A program made the position numbers and the translations under genes. The notes under the pieces are model-generated. The model had not been told where the DNA came from, did no database searches, and saw only the letters and a list, made by a program, of their open reading frames with translations. This document shows positions 33,301-61,772 of a stretch of DNA of 64,000 nucleotides, piece by piece (within the stretch, counting starts at the first letter, position 1; the number at the start of each line of letters is the position of its first letter). Where the stretch lies: assembly GCA_024704765.1 (NCBI GenBank), contig JAKMXF010000066.1, forward strand, positions 627,854 through 691,853, read 5' to 3'. This DNA comes from Oopsacas minuta (lineage: Eukaryota > Animalia > Porifera).

Positions 33301-36300
33301 ATTTCAATATTTACCATACAAAGATTAAACATACTTCAGCAGCTAGCTTTGTTTTGAGTGCCGGAGACCCGAATAGTGTCGGGGTTTGAGTTAAAGGCTG
33401 TTTGCCAAGCTTTAAGTTAGAAGCAAATAGATTTTTGTTCTGACATAGATGGAAGAATTGTGTTACTTCAATTTGTAGTTTTATATTTTCTAGGTAAGCG
33501 TTGAGGTCTGCTATCGGTTTAGATTCTTGTTTAACCTAAAAGCCACAAAATAAGATATTTCTCTCTGAATGAAATCACAGAAAAGTTGAAATACACTTCC
33601 ATATTTGGGCATAAATATCGTTATTTAATTAGGACACAGAATAATTTGAATTTTTAGAAATCTACTCGAATAGAGCTGTAAATAGCAAAAGTATAATTAA
33701 GGACTTCACTTAGGCGTTATACAAACAAAGAAGCCCTGAGGTCATTTGGTTGGCTCCATTGTGTCATTGAACTTTGTCCGGTGGGTATTCGCTAGTGCAT
33801 GAAAATAGAAGCCAATTATACGTAAAGTAACATTAGATAACGCATAACTACAGACTCATTGCTGAAGTATAAAACCCAAGAAAAATGGAAAGACTTAAAA
33901 CAAGCGCTAATAAATAGAGATGGGAAGTGGATGTGAAAATTGCTATAGGAAAAATAGAAGTTGTATTCTATGTTTCTGCATGTTTCTATTTATTCTTTCA
34001 TCGATTGCAATCGCTGTCGTTTTAATTTCTGGTATCTTAATGATAATACAGGTATTTCAACTGATAGGCGATGCACGAGTTGATGACAGCCAAATTACAA
34101 GAGCTGAATTAATCGATAACTTTAGTGATCACTGGCTAGTCATGACTTCATCGTTTTTCCTACTTATAATTATCTCCATTTTGTATCTTTGCATGCATTT
34201 ATCATGTATTTGTCACTTGATAAGGAGGAATAAACAGTACGATAAACAAAAGAAACAGAATGAGAAGGGGACTGAATCAAGTCCCTTACTTAAGAAGAAA
34301 GGAAAATTAGTTGTTGGAAAGGATAGAGGAGTTATTGACATGGATCATGCAAGAGAAGAGTTTTACTAGATATTTGTTTTGTTGATTATTTATTTATCTT
34401 TATAATATATTTGGAGGTTTAATTGTAGAAGAGATAATTCTTTGTCTTCATTCCTGTTTTTCTAGCATAGATAGCCTTGAGGCATATTAAAACTGTAAGC
34501 AATGCAATCGCCGATTCAAATACTTTATACAAATCTCTTACTTCATTTAATAAACACCAAAATATATTTGGCTATTTATTCGTATTTCACATTTGTAGAA
34601 AGAGGTTTAATGAGTCATTACATGCAAATACAATAGAATAGGTATGCTTAGCATTATTATTATACACATAATAATAGACACATATTTATAATATCAGTAT
34701 ATACCACTAAAACCCTCTCTTCTTTCGCAATAAACGAGACAAATGTCTGAGTGAGCGTAAGGCTACACAACACAAACAGAGCAGACCACCAGAGGTAGCA
34801 AGGAATACAAAAATAGAACCAGGAAATATAAAAAATATAAAAAACATAGTACAAGCACAAATAGAAAGTAAAACAATTACTACACAAATAACGAAAGACG
34901 ATGAAGCTACTGTTGAGATAGCGATACAGCCACAAATACAAATTACACTAACAACGCTCACAAAAACAAAGAAAGACACCGAAGTTACTCCTGCAGTTGA
35001 GATACAAGCACAAAGACATAATACACTAATAACTACACCAATAATTACAAAAACAACCAAGGATGATTGAATTGATAGCGCGATACTTACACCTGCTATC
35101 GTCCAAGTTATCGGATCATTTAAGAAGAAATAAAATGAGATTACTCTGGTCATATTATAGTGTCTATATTAGCACACAGTAAGCCTACAATGCTATTATC
35201 TCAGCATCGGATTACAAGAAATACAAAGCTTTAATAATAATAGACAAATATGATAAGGAAGAAAACAATAACAAGAACTGATAGCAATTATACACAAAGT
35301 TAAACGGATACTACGACGTAGTTCATTATTACTGCTATTAGTTATCATCTGGAGCACCTAATAATGTAGGGTATTCATGTGGGAATAGAGTATTATAAGC
35401 AGGCGGATGTGACATTGTGCTGGCTACATCATTTCGTATGGAAGTACGACTTTCCTGGCTCGGTAAGTTTGGCATATGCAAATCTGAATAGTAGCGTTTC
35501 GTTATGAATGGAAATTTGACACATAACTTCACACAAGAATAGAGGAGAAAAGCAAATATGAAAAGGAGGATGAAAAGGAGGATAAGGATAATAAAAGCAA
35601 AACTAGAAAGCAATAGAAATAGAAGAGTAGCAAAAAGCGAAGATGTAACAACTACTCCTGAGATCGCAATTATTGGAAGTACGAATATGCTGAAACATAT
35701 GTAAGAGCATTTGTTGTAGGACCTCATTAATAACCTAGCAAAATTATAGAAATTAATTAGTTTCATACTTTATATCGCCAAAAGGTACATACACAAAGCC
35801 TACAATCATATTAAGCATCAAATTACACCTGACAATAATATTGAACAACAAGTCATGCATAGAGCGGTAATCTTATTAAAAGAATAAGTGAGACAATAAT
35901 AATAATAACAAAACTTCCAAATCCTCACAATGTATTTGATAATAATATTCTATTTATAAAAATACACATTAAAACACGATAATAATGGCATATACAAACA
36001 CTATACTACCACTTCACTAGCTGGTACTTGATTATAAGTGGGTATTATCCTAGCTCTATCTCCAGCAGATATTGCGTTATAGGAAGGAGGAGGAGTACGT
36101 GTTGGAAATGAACCAATACCTTGTTCATGATGTGCTTGGGGGTTAATAAATGCATGCTCATCCTCATCATATGCCTGTTGTTGATGTTGGTCTTCTTCTT
36201 GTTCTTTCTTTCTCCATAAAGGTTGACGGCATTGTAAATATAAACAACAAACAAAAAATTGACAAGAACACACTGATAATATTAGTAGGAAACAAGTAGC

Positions 36301-39300
36301 AATTCCAGATAGAACAAAGTTACCATTTGATTGATCTGAGAACAAAAGTATTGCAAGTACAAATCCAGTTATTATGATAAATGGAAGAAGAGTGGTTGAC
36401 AAGCAGAGACAAGAATAGACCAAAAGTTTCTCACATATAAGGCAACTCTTTCCCATCTTAGAATAATATTAAGAATATATGGCAGTATAATATGAGATAA
36501 TTCATATATATCAAGGATTGGGCCTACCGATACAGTATCTAGGATATAATTCTAAGAAAGTATTAAATTACAATACTGAAGAAAAGATACAGATTCAAGA
36601 AGAGTATTAACCAAATAAATTCAGTAGAAATGCAGAAGAACTTTGCTAGTACTTACAGATTATAATTCTCATTCAGAACACGTATTAATCTCAATAATGT
36701 AAATTTCCTGCAAATAACAATACTATGAAATAATTAATCAACTGGAAAATAAAGATTCTCTCTCGTTGCCAGGTTCAACACGTGTTGACGTATACATAGG
36801 TGGAGGAGTAGGTCGATTAGCTAGCACACCAGAATTATAGAATCTCCTCTCAATGTTTCTGTCATTATAAGCACAATTAGTCTCATTTTCTATTCTAATA
36901 TTCTGCCTTCTATTCTCCCAACGTTCCTCTCTTAGTTTGTACATAATAGTACAGGAATAGCATATACAACCGAGTATAGATACAATTAGCAACGTAGTAG
37001 AACATATTAAATAAATCTCATCAAATGGAAGAGTCCCTGGTGTCGCGATGGATTCTCTATGAACATGATCTATTACCCCAAGACATGACACTATTATGCC
37101 AGCTATGAAACAGAAAGGTAACAGAAATGCTGTACAGCAAATAAACGATTTGATTATCGTTTCGTCTGTAGAATAGTTCTTCATAATAAGAAATACAAAA
37201 TTATTCAAAATATTATCTTTGTAGAGATGTCCATAATATGCTGATCGGGTATTATAAGTATATTATAGAGGTAATTCCATATAAGGAGGGAAATTTGAAA
37301 TAATGACTCATACAGCGTAAGAGAATATGCAGCTGATATTATTACACGACTTGTATAAAGTATAAACAAAGAGACTGTTCAATAGGGGTGTGTGGAGCCA
37401 ATGGTAGTCCATGGACGACACCAGGGGGTCCACAGAATGTGTCAAAATTGGTTGGGAACCGCTGTTTAGTGTGGTCGTGTACTTCAACTGAGAGTGGATA
37501 TTAAATTGATAACACTTCATAAGGTAATATAATATCTGATAGAACAAATAATAGAATATTATGCGTAAAGTTAACTATAAAGAAGACGATTCACATTGAT
37601 AAATGTAAAAAAATGAGGAAATTAATTTTCGCGTTTATAACAATAGCCGCAGTTATGTGGTTTGGGTTATACTTTTCATACTTACTTGTAGATGTACTTC
37701 TTCGTATTTCTGACCTTGGAACAACTTATACGTTATATTACAATGCTTCTTGTGACGTAAAGAATAGCTCAGTACCTTGCATTAACGATAGAAATGTAAC
37801 TCATGAATCGTTTTGTGATGGTATTATGCATTCATTCGTGCTAAATACTGTGAGTACTACAGTAGAAGGAGCGATTACGTGTACATGGACAGCTGTATCA
37901 TTTTTCTTTATTACGTGTACGGTCCCAATTATTGACAGAATAACTCAAGTGAATATAGTAAATAAGAAACTGAGTCTACAAGTTATAAATCTACAAAGAC
38001 AGTTATCTGAGAGAGCAAGGGTTATCGTTAGGAGAGCTGACAATGCTCTACCCCCCTATACAGAGGAAGCAGATGAAAGAGGGAGGCTGTTAACAGAGGA
38101 TCGATTGCCAAGATACGATACAGTCGATAATCCTGCAAACTAAGTGAAAGAGTCTATCAAACAAAAGAGTTTATATATCCTATTTTGTAAAAAGTATATT
38201 TCCTTGTTGTAAGTACTCAATCTTGGATTAAAATGTTAATTAAAAGTATTTTTAAGTACAGTGTGTGCAGAGGTAGTCCACGGACGACAGCAGGGGGTCC
38301 ACAGAATGTGTTATATTGCTATAATGGGACCACAGGTCAAAAGTGTTGGGAACCGCTGAGAGAGAGGGATTATCAAATTTTCATGTATTCCTTCATACGA
38401 TAAATTTCTAACTAGCATATATTGCTAATTTGAATGTATTTAAACCATGGATAATAGAGAAGAAATACAGAGGAGTATTGTATTACTAATTAGGCAATAT
38501 TGTACAAATATATAAATGAGGAATAAGCTACAAACTATATTCTCTAATTGTGTAATTAATAACCTTAAAGAATGGTTCATATAACAATTCGTGGTAAAAT
38601 TCATATATTCTATTGCATATTTATTCCCTTCACCTTAGCAACCTGGGTGCTATTAATAATAGCTATCCCATGGTCTATAATACAGCTTAATTTCCAAAAT
38701 TCATGCAATGATGCACATTGTCAACCGATAAAATATGGAGCTATTTTAAATATATTATTATCAGTGGTTATCATCCTATGTTGCTTGACAACGTTCCCGT
38801 TCATATGGTATTTAGTTCGTATCGTTACAAGCAATACAATCACAACACTACGAGAGAGTGACAACAGCACAGAGAGGGGAAATAGACCTTCATTCAGTAT
38901 CAGAGATAGTTTACTGCCTTCCTATAGGACCGCTACTGCAATAAGAAATGATAATATAGAGATTAGCAGTGGAAGAAGTGTACCTGATGAGTCATTAGTA
39001 GCAGATGGTTATAGTATGCAGAATTGAAGTAATGATTCAAAAACTTTGTTATAATTATTCACTGAGAGTTGAGGCTATTTTAATGAAATATTTTAAGATA
39101 TGAATTGTGGGTAAATTCTATAGTGGTCATATTGTTCAATCGATTGATCAAACTTTAACTGCCAAAAAGGTTTGAAAATATACACATTAGAAGAATTACC
39201 CATACACCAATTATGTCAATAGGACAACTAGATTTATGATGACAGCGCGGCACAGACGTCGTACACGTCTTCCATCTCCCTACACGTAGAAACTGTATTA

Positions 39301-42300
39301 AATAGATGAAAGTGAATTGCTATACATTTGCTGTACTAAGCAAATCCACAATACTTAGTTCACTATTTAAATGGATAGGTTATTAATATGTAACTACACA
39401 ATCACAAAATCTTATCAAATTACACGTAAGATCAGAAATATAAGAGCTTTAGGCATAAAATGCATTACTACAAGACTTGACTAATAATTCATTTAACTCT
39501 AGCATAAATATTGTATTCATATACTCCAATACTTAGGAACAGTTTTTGCAAATCATCTTTGAAATACAGTGGATGCCATACATGTTCTTATAACTGGTAT
39601 TAAATATACAGGAATATTTGGGAACCGTTTTCCAGAGGATGGTGCTTATATCCGGCATCCACTGTACATTGGGTATTTAACACTTTCAGAAGTGTTAAGT
39701 CCCAGTACATAGAGCTAATTGGAAGCTCCACTTAATTAAGGAAAACTGTTAGGATGAAAAGTTAACTAAAAACTTCCCATAAGCCATCATAATTAACATA
39801 TTTACAAAAGATTATTTTGTAATTAGCTATAAATATGTGTTCGTCTTCACTCCGTATAGTATCATTTGCCTGTGCATTCGGAGTGCTAACAATCCTTCTA
39901 ACTCTCTCAATAATATCAGGACTATATTTATTCGTCCTATCGTGGTCAGAATTCTGCCAATCTGTTCCTACAACATGTGAAGAATGTGAAACTTTATCAA
40001 CTAACTGTGATTATCTAATCGCATCTACATCCTTACTATCAGCCCAATCAGCATTAATAATCCTATGTTTCTATACGATAATATGCTTCTATGTGACTAT
40101 CAAACGAAACACAACTGATATATTGGAACCAGAACCAAGTGTTGAACTACCAACACCTTTCATAATGGCAGACACATCCAGGAACCCTGTATGCACACCA
40201 CATATCCTTCCTGAATATTCAGAGGCTCTTAGTGATAGAGAATGTTTGATCAGACCAAGACAACCTCCAAACTACGCTGACATTAACTAATATTGAATTA
40301 TCTGTGTGTGTAATCATACATTTTATTCAATTGTTTGTTTTATTAATCAAAAATACTTTTACTTAACTGTAGGCTGTAATTCTATTGGTCAATACACTTG
40401 ATTAAGTATAACTATACTAATTTATCATATGATTAATCATATTATCACCTTTTGAGGATATTTCAAAATTGTCCTCGAGATTAGCTTCCACCTGTAAGTC
40501 AGAGGTAAACAGGGCTGTAATAGTCGATTCTATCACTTGCGAAGGTCTAACACGATTATTTACTTAAGATTTGAAATTCTTACTAAAATAGAGTTTTAGT
40601 AGAATATTATAGTTCCAATAATCAAATGAAATTCATTTTAGGGAAATCAAGCAATTTTGAGATATTAAATCCTAGAAATACTAAAATACAAAAATACAAA
40701 AAGTTAACAAATAGCCCTAAACTAATGACTAGTTATTAATAATACAAGGAAACCTCTTCTGAGAGAGTAGATTATTTTCATTTGATTTAGGATCTCTTCC
40801 AACGACAGTCCCGTAATCTGGGAGATCATTTAATAGACGCTCTGTGTCCGGCGCGGATGGGGAGGTAATTGGGTCAACATGTGTTGGGGGGTCTCTTGGG
40901 ATGTATGGGCGTTGTATTTCCGGTTTAGGTATAACTCTATTGATCCTCTGTATCTCAACATGTAGTCCGGTATTCGTAGCTCGTAGATCTTCTATATCCT
41001 CCTTCAGCCTAGCTATAGCCCGATTCAACTTCCTTTTTGTACTTCGGTTCGTTTTCAAACACATGAAAAACATGAAAGTTGAAAAAACAACGAGAATGAG
41101 TGCAAATAAATTATTCAAAATAGCTGTTGATGGTAAGAAGCAATTATCCAAACCGAATTCTGTAGAGAAATGCTTGTAATTCAAACAAGTCTGTTTAATA
41201 TCACTAAAATTGATATTAGTTAGTACGAGTAGCGTGGGAGAAGATACAGATACGAAGATTAAAGATATAATCAGCGGAATAGACAATAAGATAAATAGGA
41301 TAATCTCGAATTTGATTTTACACATCTTGGGGTAAGAATAAGATTTGCTAAATAAAATATACAAACACTACAGTTTAGGCATATATAAGTATTTGAAATA
41401 TGAGATATGGGAGATTTGATATGCGTATTTCTAACAGGTATAATTAATTAATACATGGATATATATGGGACTTTTCCAGTTCACGATATTGTCATTTCAA
41501 ATATACAACCACGTATATTCTGCAACAAGACACATAACTAACTATCAAATACAGTTATATGTAAGTTTATTAAACGACTATGCTATATTACTCATGAAGA
41601 ATACACTAATGATAGATAGATGAAGTAATAACTAATTATTGGTGTTAATTAGCTAAATATTAAATATCTAAGAAATATCCCAATAAACTTATTTCACACA
41701 TAAAATACTAACTGCTTTAGGGATGTGGGTACTTATAGTATAAGAGTTGGTTCACCTGATTGGGCTGAGGTTCCTCTCCAATAACAGCCCCGTAGTTGGG
41801 AAGATGGTCGATTAAAGAGTCAGTTTCTTCACCAGTTTCTAGATCTTCTCTAGCACATGGAAGGTACTCTAATTCAGTCATTTGTTGACTTGTATTTTGC
41901 ATGTCATTTCGTATTGGATTAGTGTTTGGCTGTCCTCTCACTCTCTGAGACTCAACATGCAATGCCCCTATTTCATCATGTAACTCAGTTATTTCAAACG
42001 TGAGTAACCTCACTTCCTTTCCCCATTTCTTCTTAGTATCCGCGTAAGCGTTTCGAAATAGTAAAATGATTACAACCGAAGTAATTACAAGACAAATGCT
42101 CAACAAATTATGGAAAATCCTGAGCAATGGTAATATGCATTGATTCAAATCATCATCAGTCGTATGATTAAGATAATGAATACATATATCTTTTAAACCA
42201 TCGACATTAGTATTAGTTAATAGAAGCAATAAAACTGATGATATGGCTATGTAGAGGACGGATACAGTGAATGGTATAGCGAATATCACAATACACCATC

Positions 42301-45300
42301 TTACTTGGCAACAAGGCATTTTTATTATTGGGGATACGATCTATAGCAATCTAGTTGCTTATAAATACAGTTGTATGTTTGTTCGTTTACTAATCAGCTA
42401 CGCTATATGAGTCATAGTGTGAATAGGCTGAAAAGATTCGTAATTTATAGATGAGGTAATGACTAAATTGTGGCATTAGATTATTCTCTGATATAATTAA
42501 CAGGGGCTGACTAGAGCTTGGGGTGTCAGGGGTAATTGTTATATACAACCATAAACTGTAAGTAGTAAGTATAATTTAATAGGAATTAATCACAATACAT
42601 TCAAAACCTTAAAATTACGTATTTTAAACATAGAATCTAGCAATCACAGAATATATTATATTACTCATATTTGTAATATTTCAGGAGTTTGTTATTCAAG
42701 CTGAGTGTTATAGAGAAATTGCTAACAAATAAAAAAATAAATAAAGTTTAATGCTACATATGATTGCAGTGATTATATTGTGTCAGGATTTTCATCAATA
42801 ATATCCATATATGAAGGGGGACGAGATGTTACAGAGATGCCGGCTGTACCTTCAAAATTATAAGACGCGAGATTGCGAGAAGCTCGAGCACTATCCATAG
42901 TTCGTGGCCGCGAATGTCTACGCCTTATAGCTATTTGTTTCTTCAAAGTTCCTATTTTAAACTCCTTTTGTTGTACTGATATTATTAGTCCGCCAGATAA
43001 GGCAATGAAAAAAATCAAGCCAATAGTACTGATACCTAATACAATAGTAACGATGTACTTCCAAGGACTTCCTTCATCACAACTGATACCGGACCACACA
43101 GCGAAGAGATACACCAACTCCGTGGGGACAGAGCAAATAGTCCATATGACGAGAAGAGTAAAACAAGTGAGAGAGGTAGCGAAGCAACAACTGTGGTCAC
43201 AGTTTGGCATAATAACGATATTAAGGACCTTCAGCTAGACTTATCAGTTATTTCAGCTGGAGTATATCATCAAAAATGGTTTACAAAACGAGATAGAAAT
43301 TTTGGTTGAGTTATAATACCACAAATCCGTATGACAACAATTATGGTAATTAACTGGAGGAACATTGTGCAGTAGACTCCCGTAATATCAAACACGAATA
43401 TATCTAAATAACCACTAATATCGAAGTAAGTATTACGGTCCCTTGAGTTGTGATATAACAGGAGTTGGGTACACTTGAGATTATATTAATTTGATAATTT
43501 AGATAATTGCATTAATTATTATCAGCAAATTGAGCATAGGAAGGTGGATTTGAAAATGTATGATTTCTGCCTTCAACATACGGTGTATAACCAGGTAGGC
43601 TTGAGTGAAATCCCCGCAATCCGCTTAGCTGTAACCTGCTCTCCTCCAAAGATGAACTTGTGAAAGTGCCATCCTCATTTTGCCTCCAAGAATCGCTATA
43701 CCTAGAATTTACTGCGTGTAATTCATTCCATATGACAATAGTAAAGCAGCAACAAGTAGCTGCTAAACACACCAGCATCATGCCAAGTATAAACTGCATG
43801 AAGAGTACAATTAAGACAACTGCCAAACTCTCTCGGACTGTTCCAATTTTCGCATCTTTCTCATAGCCAGAAATTGAGAATAATATCGTCACGACCAATG
43901 AAGAAACTTCAATAAGCAACAGGCAAAAGCATAGATATATTGTACAGCATGAAATACAGTATTTACGCGATTTTGTCATTGTGTTTTCCCAAGCTAAAAT
44001 GTTTATAATTGTTTCGTACGAATTGTAATTTATACCGTAAATATTGCTGAGCCTACTGTAATTTCTAATTGAAATAGATATCAGTAGATTACCCAGCGTA
44101 AGCAATGAAAATCCTTGTAATATTATGTCATATGAAAGTGTCTGAAATAAGTGATTTGGATTTGTAAATATTTTCATGAAGATATTATTTCACAGGAAAA
44201 TTTGGTTGTTTGCATTTTAAGGAAATATGCAATATGCCATTATGGATTGCTGGTTTGGTTCAGGTGTTTTATGATGATTGTGCAAACACAGGAAGTAAAA
44301 GAATGGCAATTTGTGATCATTATTAAGCAACCAAAAATGTTATTCGTATTTACTTTAGAGGAAGAAATCGCAAAAAATATTTACGGTATACATATTTATA
44401 AATATGAATTGGTCATCAACAACTAAAAGATCTTCAACAAAAAGTGAAATTCTCCAATTGAGTCTCAGACCATATTTCCTAGGATTATATTTCATCTTCT
44501 TATGCTCAATAATTCTCATACAAATTATTATATTCTTAATAAAAGGCCAAACTTCTTCTGAAGTGAATTGTTACTTGGATATAAGTCTACTTGTCCTATT
44601 GATATTGGGGAATATCCCAATTGCATTTGTAAACCTAATTATCCTGAAGAAACTGAGAGGGGCGAATGCTACGATGAAACTTGATAAAAGAAGCTTATAC
44701 CAAACATCTGTGTATGCTCATACTCGAGTTTTGGAGTATAGAACTTCTTATCTCTAGATTATTCTATTTGTTCATATTTTTATTCTATTATTAATACATT
44801 ACACTTCTTTTTAACATATTTTCTAAGGACCGGGCTAGATATTATTAGAACAGTAAATCCCAGTTATAAGAAACCCTTGGGAGTAGGGATACATGTTCTT
44901 AAAACCAGCATAAAGTATAGAGGAATATATGAGAACCGTTTTCAGAAGAGGGTGCTTATATCCAGCATGTTCTTATAACAGGTATCCACTGTACTGCATA
45001 GCAGTACATACTAAGGTATAGCTGATGGCGAAGAAAATGAAACAAAAGAGTGTCAAATAATCTGCCATTGAAAATCATCAAACTTGAAACTCGCAAATAT
45101 TCTATTCAAATTGTTACAATCGATAAGAACTAGATAGCGTATATATATATATATAGGAGTATATAGGTTAAATAACTCCTAAAAGTTAAAGTTATCTGAA
45201 AATGCGCAAAGATATATTTTTCGCATTATTACTCTCACTCTATACAGTGATAGCAGAGATATCTCTAGACCTTGATGAGTACACATTACAAGATAAACAA

Positions 45301-48300
45301 GTAGGTCAGGGAGCTGGATTATTACTAAATTCAACTCCTTTTATAACAGGATTGATAATTTTGATTATTATAGTTTGTGTTATAATGTGTGTAGGAGTTG
45401 TGATTGGATGTTGTTGTAGTAAAATGGCTTATGATACTGAGAGAGAAGTTAAGAAAATACATTTGTGACTGTTTGATTGAAATGCTATTAAATGATATTA
45501 AATATTTTCTATTTATAAACTGGCTATTCGTACGGACTAGTGCTTATAGAAATTGAATCCATACGCACGACACCTATTAGGTTAAATTTTGGGCAAAATT
45601 AAGAGTTAGAAAATATTGACACCTCCCTAAAAAGGGGAGTAATGAATTGACCTATCAGATTTGGGGGTATACTCAGGACATGCAGGCTGATATTCTATTG
45701 GTTTAATTGAATATACAAGTTACATAGTGGGAATTGATTGAATACAAGGGCTATGCCAGCAGACAGGTTAAATGAATTGTTGCTAAATAACTTTCAAAAG
45801 AGATAGGTTATTCCAAGTCAGGAAATGTGCTAAATAAAACACAAAATAGTTGTATTATGAAGTTCTACTAAAACTGATAAATATGTTGGCAGAGCAAATA
45901 TTATTAATTAAATCATAGTAAATTCAACTATTGTGTTCTTGGAAAATATAATTATTCTCCATTCGATTACTCACAAATATTTATATGCACAATCTATCTC
46001 CCCAAAATACCAAGAAAATTACTCTTTGAAAGGTAATCTAAATACAGCAAATACAAGTATAAATATGGTGAAAAATTCCATTATCATCAACAGAATGACA
46101 TTACCAACTGTAGTTACAATAATAGTCATAACAGCCTCATTATACATAGCATATTACGTCATATATGTATCTGTACACACAGACAACTTATCTACTAACT
46201 CTTCAATTCACGTTATCCCTGATGGATACGTTATTAAAGATATTATAGTGCTTATAGTCAAAGGCTTAAGCGTGCTATGTGTTGGAGGGATAGTTTGTTG
46301 TATTATTTCTATTGCATGTGTTTTATATGATGGAAAATGTTAAATTAATATTATAGCTCAAATCAGCGGTCCCAACCTGGGTCCATTGACCTCTTGGTGG
46401 TCCAGGGAGGACAGCAGAGGATCCACACTCCACAGGATATGTTAAATTTGTGATGTTAATTAATAGCTCAAATATACTTTAATAATATCTACATAAGAAT
46501 ACACAAATATTAGTTAGGCTTATACACACGTGTAGCTTCCCTCCCCACGGCATGAGAGCCGTCGGTAGCTATCACTCTTTCCCTCTCAAGTACTTGAACA
46601 CGACCACTTTGTGTCAACCCGGCAACTCTAGTGATATGCTTATTAACCAATACCCCGTCAATAATAACTTGCTCTACTTCTTCGCCAACTATCAGAGGCT
46701 GTGCAGCTGGTTGATTACGTCTAACTACTTGATTGTTATAACTTCTTTGTTGTCGAGGTAGTCGTTCTCGTTGTTGTTGTTCTCCCTCACATAAACAACA
46801 ACAACACCCGTAGTACACACAACATACAATTAGACCCATTTTAAAGAAAACTGAGTCATTCAGACAATATATACATACATCAGTCCCATAGCCTATTAAA
46901 GTGTAACATTATATTGGGTATTATAGGAATAATACGTAATTACGTATATACAGAAATATGCTTAATCTACAGATAGGAATTCAAATATTTGAATTAATCT
47001 GGAAAAGTAGGATTGACTGAGAATTGTTAAGCTCCACCTTGAGTAATTTAAAAATCTCCGTTACAACATGCTTGGAATTTGGTATGATGTTAAATGTTCA
47101 ATAAATATTAAAATAATAATTCCTTACATGCTATGGGGTGATACAAATATACTATTAATACACACCAACTAGTTAGCTATCACTCTGTACTTCTACAAGT
47201 AACTAAACATTCCACTATTCGTCATTACTTATTAATCGAGCGATCATGCATGACAGGTTGTGCCACTTCCTCAGCAACTATCGTAGGATATGCAGGTGGT
47301 GGTGGTGTATCACATCTAAATACTGAGTTATCATGACCTCTCTGTTGTGGTTGAGATCTATGTTCTTCTTCCTTTTGAAGTCTTCGCCGTTCAAGTTGTT
47401 GTTCAATTTGATATTGCTGCTGCTGCTGCTGTAACCGTTGAATTCGTTCTCGTTCAAGTTGAAGTTGTTGTTCCAGCTCAAGTTGCTGCTGCTGCTGCAG
47501 TAGTAGTTGTTGAATTCGTTGCTGTTCCATTTGTAGTTGTTGTTCTATAATTTGTTCCTGTTGTTGTCTAATTTGACCTTGAAGTTGTACCATTTGTATT
47601 TGTTGTTCTACATGATGATCTTCTTGTTGTTGTCGTTGCTGTTGTTGAGTCTGTTGAATTTGTCGAATTTGTCGTTTGCGTTTTTTATTTTGTCGCTCTT
47701 CATCTGTCTCACAACATAAACAACAACAGCAAAGATAGTAAAGACAACACAATATACACATTTTAAAATGAAAACTGAGATATTCACATAATATATAGTA
47801 TGTATTGCCTAATTTCAGTGTAATCAATAGTGAGAGTTATAGGAATGTATAATGTGGAATAGATATGTTTGTTAATGTATTACTTACTTCTAATTCATTA
47901 CACACACAAACAAACCAAATACAAATCACAAACAAACAATTAAACTCAAATCAAGAAAACGGTGGAGTACAACTATCCTGTACAAACGGCTTACTGGGAT
48001 TATTACCTCCGAAAGCTGAATAGTGTCTGGTGACTTTAACTCCATCAACATATCCTGTCTCAGTCTTCTGTTCCTTAAACAAAGGAGTACGGTCTGTCGA
48101 CGGGTTTATTGTCCGAGGAGAATTTCTATTCCGGAATGAATGATAGGAAACCTGTGGAGTTACGAATTTAGCACCTTTGTGATTACCAAAATCTTCATCA
48201 CAGCAAGTTATACAACAACAAACAATACTAGGGATTAGGAATGTTATGAAAATACAGCTGGAGCATCCGAGGATTACTGCAGAAATCAGGAACTGAAAAT

Positions 48301-51300
48301 TAAAGAAGCGAAGAGTCCAATCTACTGTTGTGGTAACCGTAACAGATGAATTCAATGTAACATATGCATATGAACTAAGGTCCCATACCAGGACAATGCA
48401 GGTCCCGTTCGGTCCGACCGAGCAATTCATTAGCTCAGTTGGATTCGTTTTATTGCTATCATTTATGGTTATCTGTATTCCTGTCTCGTTAGGGGCAGTG
48501 GCTTGTAAAAACAGTAGTAACGGTTTAGTCTTGAAAATATTCGTGAAATAATGCGAGGAATTGATAGGGATAGGACTGACTGTAGTATTCGGAGGGAAGG
48601 AAATATCGTTGGAAGTTAAATTAGCGAGCAATTCTTTATCATGGGTAATGAAGAATATTACACAACTCGGAATGAGCACTAGTAACGCCAGGATCATAAA
48701 ACATACATTACAGAAGGCACAAATAAAACTAAAAGTCCCCATTTTAAAACGATAATCTGAGATCTTCAAGCTAGCTATATATCCGAGCCAGTGCCTACTA
48801 CAACAAGATTATTAAAGCTTAAAGTAATAGCAGACTAATTATTGTGTTTATTCAGCAGTTTACTTGGAAACATTTCTCAATGCATTGGCAGTAATATAAT
48901 ATCTGCTATCACATATATGAGTCAGAGAGCTACAAGGCCAATTGAAAGTGACGCCAATGATCTATGTGGAGACAATGTGGCCAAACATATGACCACAGGA
49001 ATGAGGAACCATGAGCATAAAGATTTCAACAATCTGTATAAAATATCATTAAGGTAACTACAATTATAATGACATACAGATACAGATAAGGACAATCTAC
49101 TTATAGAGTCAGATTTAGTTTAGCCTTGATTTCCTTCTCAGACTTATCCTGTCCAGCTTTCTTCTCTGCTAGTTTATTCTCAAAAACTTGAAAATTTGTG
49201 AGTTCTGATTTCTTCCCCTCAGCTATAATAGTATGTGAGGGTGATGTTGTGTGAACTGAATTGGTGGGGGAAGCAGTTGTTTTAGGGTTCTCCACGTCCT
49301 GATTAGGAAGTGGGACTAAGAAAAACTGGCAACTCATTATGCAAGTCATACAAAACGAAAGAAGACAGAAACCAATAGGAAATCCTATTAAAGTAACTGG
49401 AATAATATCGGTAGCAGTAGTATAATTGCAATTATTGAAAAGACAAGCGTTATGATGTGACAAACCCCGCAACAGCAAACTGCCCTCCCACGAGATCTGA
49501 TAAACTTTACTTCTAATTCTCCCATTTGAGCTCTGTAGTCTTTTGAATTTTGGGTTGAGTATTTGATTTGATTAATTTTCACAGAATTACTTCATATTTA
49601 TAATAGTAAAGCAGGACCTTACGACTATGTTAGAGACTCACCGTGGGAAGCAAACATTATCATTTTATGAATTCATTTGACTTCATGACGACACAGAGAA
49701 AGAAAATATCACGCAAGGAATGTTTTAGAAATCTCATTAAATCAGTGTGTAACACTATCTCAATTCTAAAATGCCTTCAATGTATTTACCTACTTAGCAT
49801 ATTGAAAGTGAACTGATAACAGAATTGGATTATATGCAATTATTTACTGTCAGATGTGATATTTTGAAGCACAAGCGACTGCGATAATTACAGTGGAATC
49901 TCGTTAATACGAATTTCCGGATAAGACGACCAAAAAATGTGGACGTTTCCTCCCAAAATGGATATAAAGTCTGTACTAAAGTGTCACAATGATACAGTTC
50001 GACAAAACCAAAGTTGACACAATTCCCAATTAGCCCAAGTAAGGACCAACACATATCACCACTGCATATAGCCAGAACAATAGTATACATTCTATTGCCA
50101 GTCTTCTACAGTATGTCTGCTAATAGCTAACAAGAAATAACCAGCCTACAAAAAGTACGAGCTGTTCGCCAACATGTTGTTGAATACCTAGCTATTCTCC
50201 ACGTATGTACTAGATTAGTATGTAAATTGGAATAAGCATTAAACATTAGGTAACACAGGTACGAATCCACATAACAATAACTATATTCACTCAATCACGA
50301 ATAAGTCAAGCACGCGAGTGAACTTTTGGTATAAAAATGGAATTTAGAAGTTTGTCATAAATGAAAAATCGCAATATTTTGGTGATCACTCTATTGGTGA
50401 TTGTATTTATTCTGATTTCTCTATTGGTGTCTACTGGTTTGTGTGTATTAATTCTCTCATTTGTTAATTATGGACAACTTTACAAAAAAGATATAATTAT
50501 ATCTACAAACCAAACAATCGATCTTGAAATAAATTCAGTAGATTGTCCGGTGAAATACGGCGGGGGTCAGAATCTTCTGAATCTTACAATCTCAAATCCA
50601 ACACCTTCAAGGCTGGATGTATATGTAGAAATCAAAAGCAAGGAAACAAACTTCAATAAAAGCTGTATGGCGCATCCTGGAGATAGCTGTAGTGTTAAAT
50701 TGGACGAGAGTAACGCATTTCGAGTTTCATTACAGACAAATACTTCACAAATATATTCTACAGAAACTATTGCCTTAGTCTTGTCTTGTGAAGTTAATAG
50801 TAATGCACTAGCAATCACTGGAGGTATTATTCTAAGTGTTGGGATTATTTCGGGAATAGTGTTGTTATTGTTTGTTATTGTTTGTTTAATTAATTGGAAT
50901 TGTTTTAGTGACAGCTCCAATGCATTATACGGATAAATATATTTACAAATATCTGTTGTATTATATCCATATTATAAATTCTAATTACAGTATTCATTGA
51001 AACAAAAGTATCCAGATTGGTTACGTCATCATTACCATGGCGATAATAGCAAAGAATAAATTTAATTTCTCAGTCATCATTCAACAAATCTCAAAATCTT
51101 TGAATAAATATTAAAGGCGTAAAAGTATAGCAAATAATATCTACACATATCTAATAGAGGCATTGTGGGGTGTACTCGGTTGTGTAGTGGGTAATTCTTT
51201 GAAAGGAACATTGTCAATGTAATCCAAGGGAATAGGAGAGTTTGCTTGAGGGAACGAATCAGGACTGCGTTTTTGCAAACATTTCAAAACCCAAATAGAG

Positions 51301-54300
51301 CAGCAATTATAGTAGAAAAGTGAGATAATAACTATTAATACGAGAGAGATTATTAGTGTGCAGAAGGATGCGACTTTTACTGGGTTTTCCCAGTAATCGC
51401 AGTACCAAATAAATTGTGTCTGATTATATTTGCTATTTCTAGTGGAAGGGACTACAACTGCCAAGAAATGTGTATGATGGATTGGGAAATTCAGGCTACA
51501 AGTAACACCAGGAGCTGAAGCACATGTTGAAATGAGATTTGTATAACCTTGATCATTCCTACCAGCGTAATAATGGAGTAATAGACTCTCAGTTGCACCT
51601 GAATCAGTAAGTAGATTAAGTTGTAGATAGTAGAACTTGTCATTGAATAGAAATAAACTGAACTTTGGACACATTTCTAGGTTAAAATTCAGGTCAAACT
51701 CTTCGCCATTAACTATATCGCCGATATATGTAATTGGAGAAGAAACAGATAGAATAGAAATAGCGAGTAGGACAGATGAGATTATCAAAGAAATTAATAA
51801 TAGAATGAAAATTAATGTTATAGCAAGGAAACAATATTTTATCGTGCATGTAGTGCATCCACATAGTGTTGACAAATAGCTAATGAATTTCACCATATTT
51901 GCTAGAATATTTTTATGCAACATACAGTGTATACATACATATATATATCACATGGAAATTCATACAATGCATTCATTAGCGTGTCGTAGCATACATAGTT
52001 TTGAGTGACCCAAATAGAGAAAATCTATTCAACCAAATCGATATATGAATATTACTCACTCTAGTTTTGCTATCCACAGCTTGTAATAAATGCTTCTTTG
52101 CGTCTTCCAAAAAGCGTAATCGAGAATGTAGAATTTTGTAAGTGACAAGAGGTTCATTTGGTTTTTGACTTTGATAGAATAAAATGCAAGTTTTAGCTGC
52201 ATCAATATGATCCTAGAGAATCACAAATTATGTGAATGTTACGAAAATAGTATAAATGAAAAATAATAGAAATACAGTCACATCTCATTTATCGAAGCAC
52301 AAGGGCAAACTTCCACTCCGTTGCAAGTTGAATTAGAGTAAAAATAATTCGTAACAAACCTTAATAAAATTCTGCAACTCATAAGCTATATTATAAAGAT
52401 TCCGTTTAGTGAAATAATCACAGCTCTCTTTGAAGAAAAAGCTCCAATACCTCAACGTTGGGTCATTAGTAATTATATCTTTCTTCAAATCCTCCCAGAG
52501 TCCCTGCTTCATACAAGGAATTAGCAAGCCATCGCGAAAAGTCTCAGAAGTACAATTCTAGAAAAATCAAAGGTGTCAATTGTCAAATAACAAATAAAAA
52601 AATAATGGTATACTCCAAATAATAGAGCCAGGTAATCTACAATGGTCTGGTCCCAATGTGACCCTATAAGTGGAGGCTAGTGTAATTAAATGAACTAACT
52701 TGAGCTTGCACATATAGACAGGCCTTCTTCACCATTTTATACTTAATCAAAAATTCGAGTGTTTGTTTTTGAGATCCATAAGTCTTAAGATAATACTGTA
52801 CTTCTTCAAATTGTAATTGATTCATGTGTGTGGCGTTTGTAGATTTATTTTCTGAGTCAATTATTGAGTTAAGTAATAGAATATTGTCTTTACGGAGTGA
52901 CTGGAGTATTTCGTCAGGATTCCAAATGGATAGGACTGAGTTTTCTATCTGTTCTACTATCTGAGTAATTAGTGATTGGTTCTGTTGGGAAGGAACTAAA
53001 ATGTTGGAAATAATAGTAATTACAAGAAATATATTAGTCGTTATAAGAAAATCAGCTGATAATTATGCAATATGAGAGTTTATGCCAGCTGTTCCCAACC
53101 TTGGGTTCACGGACGACAGCAGGGTCCACAAAATGTGAAAAAGGTTGGGAATCGCTGAAATAGGACAAATTCCATAGTTATACCTTGTTGCTGCGCTGTA
53201 TCCCCTATCGGTTGCAGACAATGTTTGAATTTCTCTCTGGCAGCTTCGTAACGTCCGTCTTTAAGGCAAGACAAGCCCCAAGAAACCCAAACAGAGAGAG
53301 TATCCAGCACACACTTAGTGCTAATATCAAGAGCTAAATGCCAGTAGCTGTAACGTATCAGTGTATCTCTGAGATATCTGGTCTCTTCTGTATCAGATAG
53401 TTGAGGGAGGGAAGGAATTATAATCTCACTGTCTTGCTTAGAGATTATAGACTGTATTAGACCAATCCGGTCTAGGTATAGATCACATTTATTCACCTAA
53501 GATCACTCTCATAATAATTACAAATACAGTAGACTCTCGTCAATACGAAGTTCCACATATCTACCCGAAATCAGGTCTATACAATGGTAATTGAATTGGA
53601 ATTACAGTTGCTATGGTTATAAGAACACCTTTGGAGTAGCAAATATGTTCTTATAACCGATATGAATTATACAAGAGTATGCGAGAACCGTTTTCCAGAG
53701 GATTGTCCTCATATTTCATGTTCTCAAAACCGGTGTTCGTATTTGCGAGGTTCCACTGGGATAATTAGTTCGTGACTTACCCCTTCAGCCGATTCTGTCG
53801 TTGAAAATAATAATTTGGATTTATTGAGTAGCTTCTTCATCATATCAACAACATAAATACAATCTACTTCAGTAGAGTCAAATACTTCCTTCAATTTCTC
53901 AGATAGTTTCACAGCTAAATCAAGTAGGAATATTGCTGTTTTATCGTTATCAGAATGTAGCATTGCTATATTGATACAAAGATCTGGATTAGGAGCTTGC
54001 TCGAAGTAAAAATCAGACCGAAGTTTGTTGTTTTTTTCACGATTATTCCTGTTTAGTTCCCAAAAGTAGGAATGTCTTGGTTTGAAGAGAGCATCTGGAT
54101 GTTCTCTCTCTATAAATGAAGAACTAAGACTATTCGATTTCTTATGGCCTTTCATCTTTAGGCCTGAATCTTGGACATCAGGCGAAGGCTTTGAGTAATA
54201 AGTTTTGTGACAGGAAATGCACACACGTACGAGACCTTGGTAACCATCAACGTGATATCTAATTGAAGATATCAGTAGGAATATTTCATTAATTATACAG

Positions 54301-54614: not shown

Positions 54615-55600
54615 CTAAAATATAATTATTTGTGTAGAATTTGGAGTAATAATTGCACTCTTATGACATCAGATTGTTGTGTGTAATATATTTGATGACC
54701 AATATATGCAAGTTCAATAGGTTGAAATATGCTAGAGTTTTTCATAGTAGTAGTATTGTATTACAGTTATTATATTATACAACCAGAGTTTTACTATCTA
54801 TCTTATCTTATATAAAGTTTATAGAAGAAATTTATGATAATATTTTATCAAATTTATATATTTTGCTCTGTTTAGATCTTTGTTGTGTATTTTTTGATAT
54901 TTAAAGGGTAAGGCTTTTGGGAAGAGAAAGAGTTATTTGTAAGAAATTTTATACATTTATCTCCATAAATATGCAAACGGTGAATATGGCTGAAATACAC
55001 TGATTATCTCTAGAAGGAGAAAATAGTGGTAATAATAAGACATGTTCCGTAAATCTCTAATGGCCATAGCGAACGAAAGTTGAAATATGTGACCAATTTT
55101 TTGGAGTTAGTGGACCTAGCTGTTAGTTAGAATTCTTGTGGCGCCCAATGCAGAGCTCTGATTCTTGTGTCGCATATCTAGATTTCGAAATTCCTTCTTC
55201 CGTTTCTGGTTGCTAAGTTGTTCTAGTCCTAGTTGAAGTTTGTTTTGTTATAGATTATCTGCTATAATTGGTGAGAAATGCCTTGACTTCAAACATGTTG
55301 ACAAGATGAAATAATTCCAAATATTCAGTATGTAACTGGAGCTTCTTATCACTACAAAAGTGGCCAAAATAGAGATAGGAACAAATATGTCTATTGCCAA
55401 GCCTCTAGAGATGACGGTGAATCAAAAGATGAAACATTAATCGTTGCTCCCTATAAAATATTTTCCATAGCATTTGTATTAAATTAATTTTGGCTTAAAA
55501 ATGAAGTCTATTTGTTATCAACAATATTTTTGGCCTCAATAAATAGGCCTACTTTAGTAAAGTTTAATAAGAAATAAATTATTAGCTTTTGAAAGTAAAA

Positions 55601-58256: not shown

Positions 58257-58391
58257 AAGTCACCTCCCGTTATATCGAAGCTCAAGGGAACGCGATAGTT
58301 ATTTCGGTATAAAAGATGATTTTTTTGCTACTTTGACGATTTGGGACCATGTTTGTACAGTTTAAGACTTCTATATAACGGAAGTTGACTG
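58257..58391. mobile_element. MITE (CAGTCAACTCCC family)
   Basis: AAGTCACCTCCCGTTATATCGAAG ... TATATAACGGAAGTTGACTG-TA. Confidence 0.7.
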
Positions 58392-61663: not shown

Positions 61664-61772
61664 ATATTTTCTGGATTTATTAAATGTTATTAATATCAAA
61701 ATTTAGTTATTACAGTGAGACATCTACAAATGGGGGCTGTGGAAACGGAGTGAATAATAATAGAGCTAATTC

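What the first reader, a model, noticed from the sequence alone, without database searches (positions are those of the whole stretch)
33536..52059. About 21 small intronless membrane-protein genes packed into one 18.5-kb intron of spastizin (ZFYVE26)
Seen: the ZFYVE26 exons at 52060-52212 and 33335-33535 join in phase 0 and are directly collinear with the spastizin C-terminus, so the 18,524 bp between them is one intron. Inside it are about 21 single-exon genes of 82-263 aa (8 on +, 13 on -), all membrane-associated, in blocks of alternating orientation and spaced about 100-900 bp apart. Two more related genes sit in a nearby 2.2-kb ZFYVE26 intron (31027-33220). Knowledge: nested genes are known, and I recall them being frequent in glass-sponge genomes, but usually one or a few per intron. 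Inference: a whole multigene family array has expanded inside a conserved lysosomal gene, and ab initio annotation would likely split ZFYVE26 or miss the array.
Basis: partly seen in the sequence, partly recalled or inferred. Interest (0 to 1): 0.9.

Follow-up and report, generated by a model that had tools for sequence, protein, structure and literature searches.

The report
Gene array nested in spastizin intron
In the glass sponge Oopsacas minuta, one 18.5-kb intron of the conserved lysosomal gene spastizin (ZFYVE26) really does hold about 21 small membrane-protein genes, and five related sponge assemblies keep the same layout; it is an extreme, undescribed case of a gene arrangement already known to be common in glass sponges.

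Summary
Observation confirmed. The window is Oopsacas minuta (JAKMXF010000066.1). The minus-strand exons 52212-52060 and 33535-33335 belong to ZFYVE26. This rests on a FYVE exon, the TPR_ZFYVE26 end and collinearity with human spastizin. A transcript contig in one public run joins 52060 directly to 33535, so the 18,524 bp between them is one spliced intron.

The intron holds 21 ORFs of 82-263 aa, 8 on + and 13 on -, and is 55% coding. It has 16 ORFs of 140 aa or more, against 0.015 expected by chance. Eighteen ORFs have counterparts, in the same order and orientation, in the same ZFYVE26 intron of five other sponge-derived assemblies. Together with O. minuta these form three deep lineages. Between the two closest relatives, most orthologues have dN/dS of 0.1-0.26.

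The array is not one expanded family. It contains at least ten sequence-unrelated families with local tandem gain and loss. Eleven proteins carry conserved cytosolic (L/P)PxY motifs, so a role as NEDD4-ligase adaptors or clients is likely but inferred. One family has a GOLD-like beta-sandwich ectodomain.

The public annotation splits ZFYVE26 at this intron, fuses pieces to nested genes, and does not list 8 of the 21 ORFs.

Nested genes are known in glass sponges, and this scan found similar nested arrays elsewhere in this genome. Novelty is therefore moderate.

The parts
33536..52059 (-). ZFYVE26 intron of 18,524 bp that holds the array
   Evidence: GT..AG ends. Junction 52060|33535 seen in a transcript contig of run X4. 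The orthologous intron is 28,027 bp in relative B.
52060..52212 (-). ZFYVE26 exon upstream of the big intron (51 codons)
   Evidence: Splice sites. X4 joint 52211>52359. 82% aa identity in relative B at the syntenic place.
33335..33535 (-). ZFYVE26 exon downstream of the big intron (67 codons)
   Evidence: Aligns to human ZFYVE26 2324-2374. 87-90% aa identity in five relatives.
52360..53496 (-). Three further ZFYVE26 exons (53184-53496, 52700-52995, 52360-52557) with two short introns
   Evidence: X4 spliced contig at depth 740. Match human 2001-2098 and 2200-2262.
54406..54660 (-). ZFYVE26 FYVE zinc-finger exon (open stretch; exact ends not set)
   Evidence: Pfam FYVE 1e-12.
30382..33280 (-). 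ZFYVE26 3' exons: 33221-33280, 30847-31026, 30608-30652 and 30382-30549, with the 2,194-bp intron 31027-33220
   Evidence: Splice sites read directly. Pfam TPR_ZFYVE26 8e-12 on the last exon. Orthologous exons found in relatives.
31359..31940 (+). Nested gene, family A (193 aa: TM, beta-sandwich ectodomain with conserved Cys, TM), in the 2.2-kb intron
   Evidence: Paralogue of 32193 (E 2e-10). One to three copies in relatives.
32193..32945 (+). Nested gene, family A (250 aa), in the 2.2-kb intron
   Evidence: Orthologues at 42-55% aa. dN/dS 0.20 for B vs C. AlphaFold model pLDDT 83. Fused with 31359 as LOD99_14852 in the public annotation.
33920..34369 (+). Nested gene (149 aa, 2 TM), the best conserved of the array; paralogue of 43512
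   Evidence: 68-74% aa in five relatives. dN/dS 0.11. Not in the public gene list.
34707..35153 (-). ORF of 148 aa, extremely hydrophobic and Cys-rich; weakest candidate
   Evidence: Open frame only. No counterpart in any relative and no family.
35338..35766 (-). Nested ORF (142 aa, TM, PPAY tail), specific to O. minuta
   Evidence: Weak similarity to the 36001 group only (E 0.008-0.03). No orthologue found.
36001..36456 (-). Nested gene (151 aa, 2 TM, PPSY tail), 'Comm-like' group
   Evidence: One to four copies per relative. PPxY invariant in 8 of 8 members. Its ATG starts a chimeric public ZFYVE26 model.
36738..37184 (-). Nested gene (148 aa, 2 TM, PPMY tail), 'Comm-like' group
   Evidence: Orthologues at 36-54% aa. 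dN/dS 0.24. Pfam Comm below threshold, 18.4 bits against 27.
37613..38143 (+). Nested gene (176 aa, TM, coiled coil, LPPY and LPRY)
   Evidence: One copy here, seven in B, three in C. Related to the 40729 group (hhalign 95%).
38572..39027 (+). Nested gene (151 aa, 2 TM, LPSY)
   Evidence: Orthologues at 43-50% aa. dN/dS 0.26. LPSY kept in all. Not in the public gene list.
39835..40290 (+). Nested gene (151 aa, 2 TM, LPEY and PPNY)
   Evidence: Orthologues at 62-68% aa. dN/dS 0.18. Both motifs kept.
40729..41325 (-). Nested gene (198 aa, 2 TM, coiled coil, LPDY)
   Evidence: Paralogue of 41717 (E 2e-22). Orthologues at 47-62% aa. dN/dS 0.16.
41717..42319 (-). Nested gene (200 aa, 2 TM, coiled coil, LPNY)
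   Evidence: Annotated protein in NCBI. Tandem paralogue of 40729.
42773..43210 (-). Nested gene (145 aa, 2 TM, PPSY)
   Evidence: Orthologues at 56-59% aa. dN/dS 0.12.
43512..44177 (-). Nested gene (221 aa from the first ATG; conserved part is about 155 aa; LPGY and PPSY)
   Evidence: Orthologue at 55-59% aa in B, both motifs kept. Not in the public gene list.
44404..44757 (+). Nested gene (117 aa, 2 TM)
   Evidence: Orthologue at 58% aa in B. Not in the public gene list.
45202..45468 (+). Nested gene (88 aa, signal-like N-terminus plus TM with a CCC motif)
   Evidence: Orthologue at 36% aa in B. Not in the public gene list.
46065..46343 (+). Nested gene (92 aa, 2 TM)
   Evidence: Orthologue at 47% aa in B. 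Not in the public gene list.
46510..46839 (-). Nested gene (109 aa, Cys-rich hydrophobic N-terminus, conserved C-terminal region)
   Evidence: Two to three copies in B at 58-63% aa. Related to 47225 and to the tail of 47951.
47225..47761 (-). Nested gene (178 aa, Cys-rich N-terminus, Q-rich coil, PPAY)
   Evidence: hhalign 97% to the 46510 group. A public model exists. No separate orthologue found.
47951..48742 (-). Nested gene (263 aa, TM, glycosylated-looking ectodomain, TM, tail); the one with clear expression
   Evidence: X4 depth 1378-4117 over the ORF, against 107 beside it and 740 on host exons. Orthologue at 47% aa in B.
49101..49591 (-). Nested gene, split here into two frames (49391-49591 and 49104-49349)
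   Evidence: Single 154-aa ORF in B. The public model is spliced, 101 aa. Intron or frameshift not resolved.
50361..50936 (+). Nested gene, family A (191 aa)
   Evidence: Orthologue at 47% aa in B. Aligns with family A. Not in the public gene list.
51141..51923 (-). Nested gene, family A (260 aa)
   Evidence: Orthologue at 52% aa in B. Paralogue of 32193 (E 2e-10).

Best explanation
This is a conserved nested gene neighbourhood. One 18.5-kb intron of the glass-sponge spastizin gene (ZFYVE26) is spliced out as a unit. It houses about 20 compact, mostly single-exon genes that are separate transcription units on both strands.

The genes belong to at least ten unrelated, glass-sponge-restricted families of small membrane proteins. 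Most have an N-terminal hydrophobic segment, a short Cys-bearing loop or a beta-sandwich ectodomain, a second TM and a cytosolic tail. The array predates the split of three deep lineages of these sponges. Since then it has changed by local tandem duplication, loss and fast sequence divergence, while order and orientation were kept.

Shown: the splice across the intron, the coding constraint, the synteny, and the separate high expression of one nested gene.

Inferred: eleven of the proteins have conserved cytosolic (L/P)PxY motifs, often followed by YxxPhi. These most likely act as WW-domain ligands, that is, as adaptors or clients of NEDD4-type ubiquitin ligases in endosomal sorting, in the manner of NDFIP, Commissureless, PRRG4 or IFITM3. 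My odds for this are about 45%. The position inside a lysosomal gene is most likely incidental, because large introns serve as gene harbours throughout this compact genome.
For: Host identity and collinearity.

Splice junctions seen in transcript contigs.

ORF excess: 16 ORFs of 140 aa or more against 0.015 expected.

Synteny: the same array lies between the same ZFYVE26 exons in ENA contigs from five other samples. Relative B was walked end to end and has a 28,027-bp intron. Relatives C, D, E and F were seen in part. The six taxa fall into three groups with 74-80% nt identity in the host exon.

Coding constraint: dN/dS is 0.11-0.26 at dS 0.5-0.86 for nine of the fourteen B-C pairs, including the best conserved array genes.

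Families.

PY motifs: 11 of 21 proteins carry 14 motifs, against 0.83 proteins expected and a maximum of 6 in 2000 shuffles. The motifs are kept in orthologues, and PPxY is invariant in 8 of 8 members of one group.

Restriction to glass-sponge-like assemblies: 11 hits among 1.84 billion representatives, and 6 hits each.

Separate expression: gene 47951-48742 has depth 1378-4117, against 107 beside it.

Background: nested genes are frequent in glass sponges (PMC10282587).
Against: Expression above the flat intron background (depth 77-107 in X4) was seen for only one of the four nested genes in the 5.6 kb that could be laid. The other 17 were not examined.

The junction rests on contigs of a single run whose library type is not on record, from the same sample as the DNA-like runs.

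Three ORFs (34707, 35338, 47225) have no orthologue in the relatives, and 49101 is broken or spliced.

No WW-domain binding was tested. The only sequence link to a known PY adaptor (Pfam Comm) stays below threshold, and the exhaustive profile search found no Comm, NDFIP or PRRG relatives.

Thirteen genes lie on the host strand. How the host polymerase passes their 3' ends is unexplained.
Confidence: 0.8

Rival explanations
1. The interval is not an intron. ZFYVE26 is really two genes here, or the assembly has joined unrelated DNA, and the small genes are simply intergenic.
For: The public annotation models two separate pieces. Contigs of the DNA-like runs break at a short repeat near 49885-49938.
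Against: A transcript contig joins 52060 to 33535. The two exons are consecutive in human spastizin coordinates. Independent assemblies from five other samples place the same array between the same two exons. Other contigs bridge the repeat (records 21 and 29).
Confidence: 0.02
2. Most of the ORFs are not genes. They are chance frames, decayed copies or transposon remnants in a large intron.
For: Eight of the 21 are not in the public annotation. No Pfam family passes threshold. Three of the four nested ORFs that were laid show no depth above background. ORF 34707-35153 has nothing but an open frame.
Against: ORF excess is about 1000-fold over shuffles. Eighteen ORFs are kept open in relatives whose synonymous sites are saturated. 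dN/dS is 0.1-0.26 between B and C. Short motifs are conserved inside otherwise divergent tails. No repeats, tRNAs or Rfam families fill the interval.
Confidence: 0.03
3. The proteins are not ligase adaptors. They are auxiliary subunits, or sorting or receptor-like surface proteins, such as two-TM channel partners like insect TipE/BK-beta or p24-like cargo receptors. The PY/YxxPhi tails would then only set their own turnover.
For: The two-TM hairpin with a Cys-bearing loop recalls TipE/Slo-beta, whose genes are also a conserved nested cluster (PMC3240667). The family A ectodomain model resembles GOLD/p24 beta-sandwiches. Ten of the 21 proteins have no PY motif.
Against: There is no sequence relation to TipE, Slo-beta or EMP24 families. 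Fold scores are modest, with TM-score 0.42 by query and 0.57 by hit. Conservation of the PY motif is the strongest shared feature of the central ten genes.
Confidence: 0.3
4. The position inside spastizin is functional. The array and the host form one regulatory unit for endolysosomal traffic, for example by shared chromatin control or by mutual transcriptional interference that sets spastizin dosage.
For: The association is conserved in six taxa. PY adaptors and spastizin both act in the endolysosomal system (established knowledge). Thirteen genes share the host strand.
Against: Other large O. minuta introns in unrelated hosts also hold gene arrays (scan notes s1-237673 and s1-290528, not re-tested here). 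Nested arrangements are generally hard to lose once formed (PMC3240667). The expressed nested gene is several-fold above the host exons, which speaks for its own promoter. The same host also carries unrelated genes such as NXF1.
Confidence: 0.12

Closest known systems
Conserved nested gene clusters of insects: GMC oxidoreductase genes in a flotillin-2 intron, and the TipE/Teh cluster in the last intron of CG18675 (PMC3240667)
   Same: Several protein-coding genes sit in one intron of a conserved host. Order is kept over long evolutionary spans, with local duplication and loss. Nested gene expression is distinct from the host. TipE proteins are also small two-TM membrane proteins.
   Different: Those clusters are each one gene family of 4 to about a dozen members in introns of 20-100 kb. 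Here there are about 21 genes of at least ten unrelated families in 18.5 kb, at 55% coding, with 13 on the host strand. No homology to either insect family was found.
Nested genes of glass sponges (Aphrocallistes vastus: 2432 nested genes, 12.4% of genes; glassin nested in both species; PMC10282587)
   Same: Same animal class and same genome style: compact, many single-exon genes, genes inside introns, conserved microsynteny. That paper also showed that automatic annotation miscalls such loci, counting only 83 nested genes in the O. minuta annotation.
   Different: That work reports counts and single examples. It does not describe an array of this size in one intron, this locus or these protein families.
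PY-motif membrane adaptors and clients of NEDD4-family ligases (NDFIP1/2, Drosophila Commissureless, PRRG4, LAPTM5, IFITM3); from established knowledge
   Same: Small membrane proteins whose cytosolic (L/P)PxY motifs bind WW domains. In IFITM3 the PPxY overlaps a YxxPhi endocytic signal; here 8 of 14 motifs read (L/P)PxYxxPhi.
   Different: No significant sequence homology. Pfam Comm reaches only 18.4 bits against a cut-off of 27, with a best E-value of 7e-5 in 7 of 8 members. The profile search of 1.84 billion proteins found no such relatives. The TM number and the position of the motifs differ from NDFIP, which has three TMs and N-terminal motifs. Binding was not tested.
p24/EMP24 GOLD-domain cargo receptors
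   Same: The family A model is a beta-sandwich followed by a helix and a TM. The top AlphaFold DB cluster hits are Emp24/GOLD proteins, and p24 GOLD domains appear among the PDB hits.
   Different: No Pfam EMP24 hit. TM-scores are only 0.42 by query and 0.57 by hit. There is an extra N-terminal TM, four conserved Cys, and no p24-type tail motif. This is a generic jelly-roll resemblance.

Membership tests
ZFYVE26/spastizin (host gene) | FYVE zinc finger in the C-terminal third | tested here: met
   Pfam FYVE 9.9e-13, 48.4 bits against cut-off 27.8, on 54406-54660.
ZFYVE26/spastizin (host gene) | C-terminal ZFYVE26-type TPR domain | tested here: met
   Pfam TPR_ZFYVE26 8.1e-12, 45.9 bits against 27, on the last exon, profile positions 75-122 of 123. 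A weak match on the exon before it covers profile positions 2-51.
ZFYVE26/spastizin (host gene) | Exons collinear with human spastizin across the big intron | tested here: met
   Human 8yad_C residues 2001-2098, 2200-2262 and 2324-2374 match in genomic order. Exon 52060-52212 fills the 2263-2323 gap by position only (one search found no hit).
Nested (intronic) gene cluster | Flanking host exons are joined in mRNA | tested here: met
   The X4 loose end at 52058 equals 33507-33533. The same run shows four other host junctions.
Nested (intronic) gene cluster | Nested ORFs are real protein-coding genes | tested here: met
   Eighteen of 21 are conserved in relatives. dN/dS is 0.11-0.26 for nine of the fourteen B-C pairs. 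Not met for 34707-35153.
Nested (intronic) gene cluster | Nested genes are transcribed on their own, not only as host intron | tested here: inconclusive
   Clear for 47951-48742, at 13-40 times the flanking depth and above the host exons. Three others in the laid stretch are at background.
   BLAST clustering gives 14 or more groups. hhalign links only 46510-47225-47951 and 37613-40729.
PY-motif NEDD4 adaptors (NDFIP/Comm/PRRG4-like) | Membrane protein with cytosolic (L/P)PxY motifs | tested here: met
   Eleven proteins carry 14 motifs, all after the last TM, against 0.83 expected. The motifs are conserved in orthologues.
PY-motif NEDD4 adaptors (NDFIP/Comm/PRRG4-like) | Sequence membership in a described family (Pfam Comm and others) | tested here: not met
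   Comm is below its gathering score in all members, with a best E-value of 7.3e-5. No such relatives appeared in the exhaustive search.
PY-motif NEDD4 adaptors (NDFIP/Comm/PRRG4-like) | Binds WW domains and recruits or activates a HECT ligase | not testable with these tools
   Needs binding and ubiquitination assays.
p24/GOLD cargo receptors (family A only) | GOLD domain recognised by sequence or by a strong fold match | tested here: inconclusive
   No Pfam hit. The best Foldseek hit is an Emp24 cluster, E 3.7e-6 and TM-score 0.42/0.57. PDB hits are generic jelly rolls.

The most novel reading that the evidence does not exclude
The intron is a long-lived 'nursery' in which glass sponges keep and diversify a private repertoire of PY-motif membrane adaptors. 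These adaptors would direct NEDD4-type ligases to different membrane cargos, for example in the syncytial tissue or in defence, as IFITM proteins do. Its fixed place on and against the strand of spastizin would couple expression of the array to that of the host through transcriptional interference and regulated read-through of 13 same-strand poly(A) sites.
Probability: 0.15. Interest if true: 0.75.

Novelty: new variant of a known kind. Interest (0 to 1): 0.55.

Why it matters
It is among the densest nested arrangements I know of: about 21 genes in one intron, 55% coding, 13 on the host strand, kept across three deep sponge lineages. That makes it a natural test case for how a polymerase and spliceosome cope with many internal promoters and 3' ends.

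It has a practical side. The public O. minuta annotation breaks a conserved gene at this intron, builds chimeras with nested genes and omits eight ORFs. Gene counts, orthologue calls and gene-loss claims for glass sponges are therefore sensitive to such loci.

It also uncovers several glass-sponge-only families of small membrane proteins whose one shared conserved feature is a ubiquitin-ligase docking motif. This gives a concrete hypothesis that can be tested at the bench.

Tried and rejected
- **Pfam on all nested proteins:** nothing passed threshold. Comm, WBP-1 and similar hits are sub-threshold leads only.
- **One superfamily for the whole array:** rejected by BLAST and hhalign.
- **ESM Atlas look-alikes** (LAPTM5, TMEM61/51/171): scores of 0.83 or less are in the range that shuffled proteins reach, so they serve only as colour.
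- **PDB sequence search with exon 52060-52212 and exon 30832-31026:** no spastizin hit. Their identity rests on position, Pfam and synteny.
- **The 553-aa open stretch 62221-63879:** no PDB hit, so whether it is a host exon stays open.
- **RNA-labelled runs:** none was listed. The four runs listed have no library record, and three behave like DNA.
- **Poly(A) signals after the ORFs:** no pattern separates same-strand from opposite-strand genes.
- **TATA-like words upstream of the ATGs:** enriched against random windows (11 of 23 against 17%), but just as frequent downstream. This reflects AT-rich spacers and is not proof of promoters.
- **tRNA and Rfam scans of 30000-54000:** empty.
- **Species names for the five ENA assemblies:** not found in the paper library.

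Full report
**Where the window comes from.** An exact look-up placed three of the small ORFs in NCBI proteins on a 1,373,672-bp contig. The contig is JAKMXF010000066.1 of assembly GCA_024704765.1. That is the Oopsacas minuta genome project (PMC10280926), a hexactinellid (glass) sponge.

**The host gene.** The minus strand carries a chain of exons that belong to ZFYVE26/spastizin.
- A FYVE finger lies at 54406-54660 (Pfam 1e-12).
- Exon 53110-53496 aligns to residues 2001-2098 of human ZFYVE26, PDB 8yad chain C (E 3e-16).
- Exon 52336-52557 aligns to residues 2200-2262.
- Exon 33335-33535 aligns to residues 2324-2374 (E 0.06, the only hit in the PDB).
- The last exon, 30382-30549, matches the end of Pfam TPR_ZFYVE26 (8e-12).
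- Exon 52060-52212 gave no hit on its own. It fills the gap between human 2262 and 2324, has an AG acceptor and a GTGAGT donor, and is 82% identical in a relative at the same place.
- Two short exons, 33221-33280 and 30608-30652, complete the 3' part.

**The intron is spliced.** No run labelled as RNA could be listed. Four runs of one sample hold the stretch. Laid on 47900-53500, three of them behave like DNA, with flat depth and contiguous contigs.

The fourth run, X4, carries a contig of depth 740 that skips 52212/13-52358/59, 52558-52699 and 52996-53183. All three skipped stretches have GT..AG ends on the minus strand, so they are host introns. X4 also has a 27-nt loose end at 52058. That 27-mer occurs once in the window, at 33507-33533. 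The next two bases, AC, are the same at both places, so the junction is 52060|33535.

A second loose end, at 53497, maps to 53782-53809, the next exon upstream. This validates the reading of loose ends as splice junctions. The 18,524 bp are therefore removed as one intron in at least some transcripts.

**The ORFs.** The interval holds 21 ATG ORFs of 82-263 aa, 8 on + and 13 on -, in alternating blocks. Spacers are 136-1011 bp and 55% of the intron is coding. Composition-matched shuffles give 0.015 ORFs of 140 aa or more, against 16 observed. All but the broken 49101 ORF have at least one strongly hydrophobic segment, and most have two.

**Conservation.** Profile searches with two of the families found almost nothing in 5.8 and 1.84 billion proteins, apart from ORFs on long contigs of ENA metagenome assemblies.

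I fetched those contigs and walked one of them, ERZ25071281 ctg49528 ('B'), for 40 kb. This showed the whole locus. The ZFYVE26 exons are 72-88% identical in protein, apart from one partial match at 60%. Between the orthologues of exons 33335-33535 and 52060-52212 lies a 28,027-bp intron. It holds counterparts of 18 of the 21 ORFs in the same order and on the same strands. The two genes in the small intron are there as well. Four further assemblies ('C' to 'F') show the same layout in the parts fetched.

By nucleotide identity of the host exon, the six taxa form three groups: O. minuta, B+C and D+E+F. The groups are 74-80% identical to each other. Between O. minuta and the others, synonymous sites are saturated. 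Between B and C, dS is 0.5-0.86 and dN/dS is 0.11-0.26 for nine of the fourteen pairs. These are therefore protein-coding genes under purifying selection, and the arrangement cannot be an assembly artefact.

Nested proteins are 31-74% identical between O. minuta and B, much less than the host exons.

**What the array is made of.** It is not one family. BLAST clustering of all ORFs from three taxa gives 14 or more groups. Profile-profile comparison adds only two links: 46510-47225-47951, and 37613-40729.

Copy numbers differ by lineage.
- The 37613 group has one member here, seven in B and three in C.
- The 36001/36738 group has two here and four in B.
- The family A genes of the small intron number two here and four in B.
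- B also has an extra NHL-repeat gene inside the intron, a paralogue of the NHL gene next to ZFYVE26.

ORFs 34707, 35338 and 47225 have no orthologue in the relatives, and 34707 has no support at all. Gene 49101 is one 154-aa ORF in B but lies in two frames here.

**What the proteins look like.**

*Family A* comprises 31359, 32193, 50361 and 51141, with 47951 as a distant member. An AlphaFold model built on 15 sequences has mean pLDDT 83. It shows a helix, an eight-stranded beta-sandwich with conserved cysteines, and a second long helix. The nearest folds are jelly rolls and GOLD/p24 domains, with modest scores.

*The ten consecutive genes 35338-44177, plus 47225,* share a different feature: (L/P)PxY motifs in the tail after the last TM. 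Eleven of 21 proteins carry 14 motifs, against 0.83 proteins expected and never more than 6 in 2000 shuffles. The motifs stay in place in orthologues whose surrounding sequence has diverged. In the 36001 group, PPxY is invariant in 8 of 8 members. Eight of the 14 motifs continue as YxxPhi.

Such motifs are the ligands of WW domains of NEDD4-type ligases in NDFIP, Commissureless, PRRG4, LAPTM5 and IFITM3 (established knowledge). Seven of eight members of the 36001 group hit Pfam Commissureless, but all below threshold (best E 7e-5). The exhaustive search found no such relatives. I therefore say they probably work like PY adaptors or clients. I do not file them in any known family.

**Expression.** In X4 the depth over 47951-48742 is 1378-4117. 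It falls to 107 just upstream of the ATG, while the host exons stand at about 740. This gene is therefore a transcription unit of its own. The other three nested genes in the laid stretch sit at the flat 77-107 background, which could be DNA or unspliced host RNA.

**Annotation.** The public gene calls around the locus include 13 of the 21 ORFs.
- A 367-aa model starts at the ATG of nested gene 36001-36456 and continues into the TPR_ZFYVE26 exons.
- A 535-aa model comes from upstream and ends at 51491, inside nested gene 51141-51923.
- Genes 31359 and 32193 are fused into LOD99_14852.

This agrees with Francis et al. (PMC10282587). They counted 2432 nested genes in Aphrocallistes vastus but only 83 in the O. 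minuta annotation, and blamed the annotation method.

**How new it is.** Nested genes are an established feature of glass sponges (PMC10282587). Conserved multi-gene clusters inside a single intron are known from insects: GMC oxidoreductases in flotillin-2, and TipE/Teh in CG18675 (PMC3240667). Earlier notes of this scan report other nested arrays in this same genome, such as eleven lectin-like genes in an ST13 intron. They also report further clusters in other spastizin introns. I did not re-test those.

What is new here is the size and density of the array, its mix of unrelated families, its conservation across three lineages, and the protein families themselves.

**Unexplained.** It is not known how the host transcript passes 13 same-strand genes. 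Searches for poly(A) and TATA words gave no usable pattern.

Noticed in passing
window 54661-62217: The DNA just upstream of the FYVE exon holds three + strand genes: a complete NXF1/TAP mRNA export factor (55589-57676; Pfam NXF_NTF2 7e-35, LRR_NXF1-5, TAP_C), a 621-aa ORF without any Pfam family (58748-60613), and another 147-aa TM protein with PPNY and LPAY motifs (61220-61663). If the host continues upstream, as scan notes say, these are nested too.
   Followed up: partly
window 49885-49938 (also 53526-53547 and 30700-30790): This is a short dispersed repeat. Depth is about 10 times the genome level in the DNA-like runs and many contigs end there. A related word occurs at 53526-53547, and a similar word forms an inverted pair inside the small host intron at 30700-30790, which looks like a MITE.
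   Followed up: partly
window 49101-49591, minus strand: The nested gene is one 154-aa ORF in relative B but lies in two reading frames in O. minuta. The public model splices it to 101 aa. Whether this is an intron, a frameshift or an assembly error is not resolved.
   Followed up: partly
L005:15665-16888 (relative B, inside its copy of the intron): An extra 407-aa NHL-repeat gene sits inside the array in relative B only. It is a paralogue of the 604-aa NHL/DUF5128 gene that lies just outside ZFYVE26. The intron therefore also takes up copies of neighbouring genes.
   Followed up: partly
window, 5-40 nt upstream of many nested ATGs (e.g. 39835, 44404, 46065, 50361): TATAAA-like words lie very close to the start codons, which would mean very short 5' leaders. 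They are just as frequent in the 3' spacers, so this may only reflect AT-rich spacers.
   Followed up: partly
window 62218-63879, minus strand: This is a 553-aa open frame, low in complexity, with no PDB or Pfam match. It may be the poorly conserved middle exon of spastizin or a separate gene.
   Followed up: partly
L002:12244-14376 versus L003:6059-6514: One orthologue pair of the 36001 group between relatives B and C has dN/dS of about 1.2 at dS 0.26. The three B copies are nearly identical in their 5' parts. This could be recent duplication with gene conversion, or positive selection.
   Followed up: no
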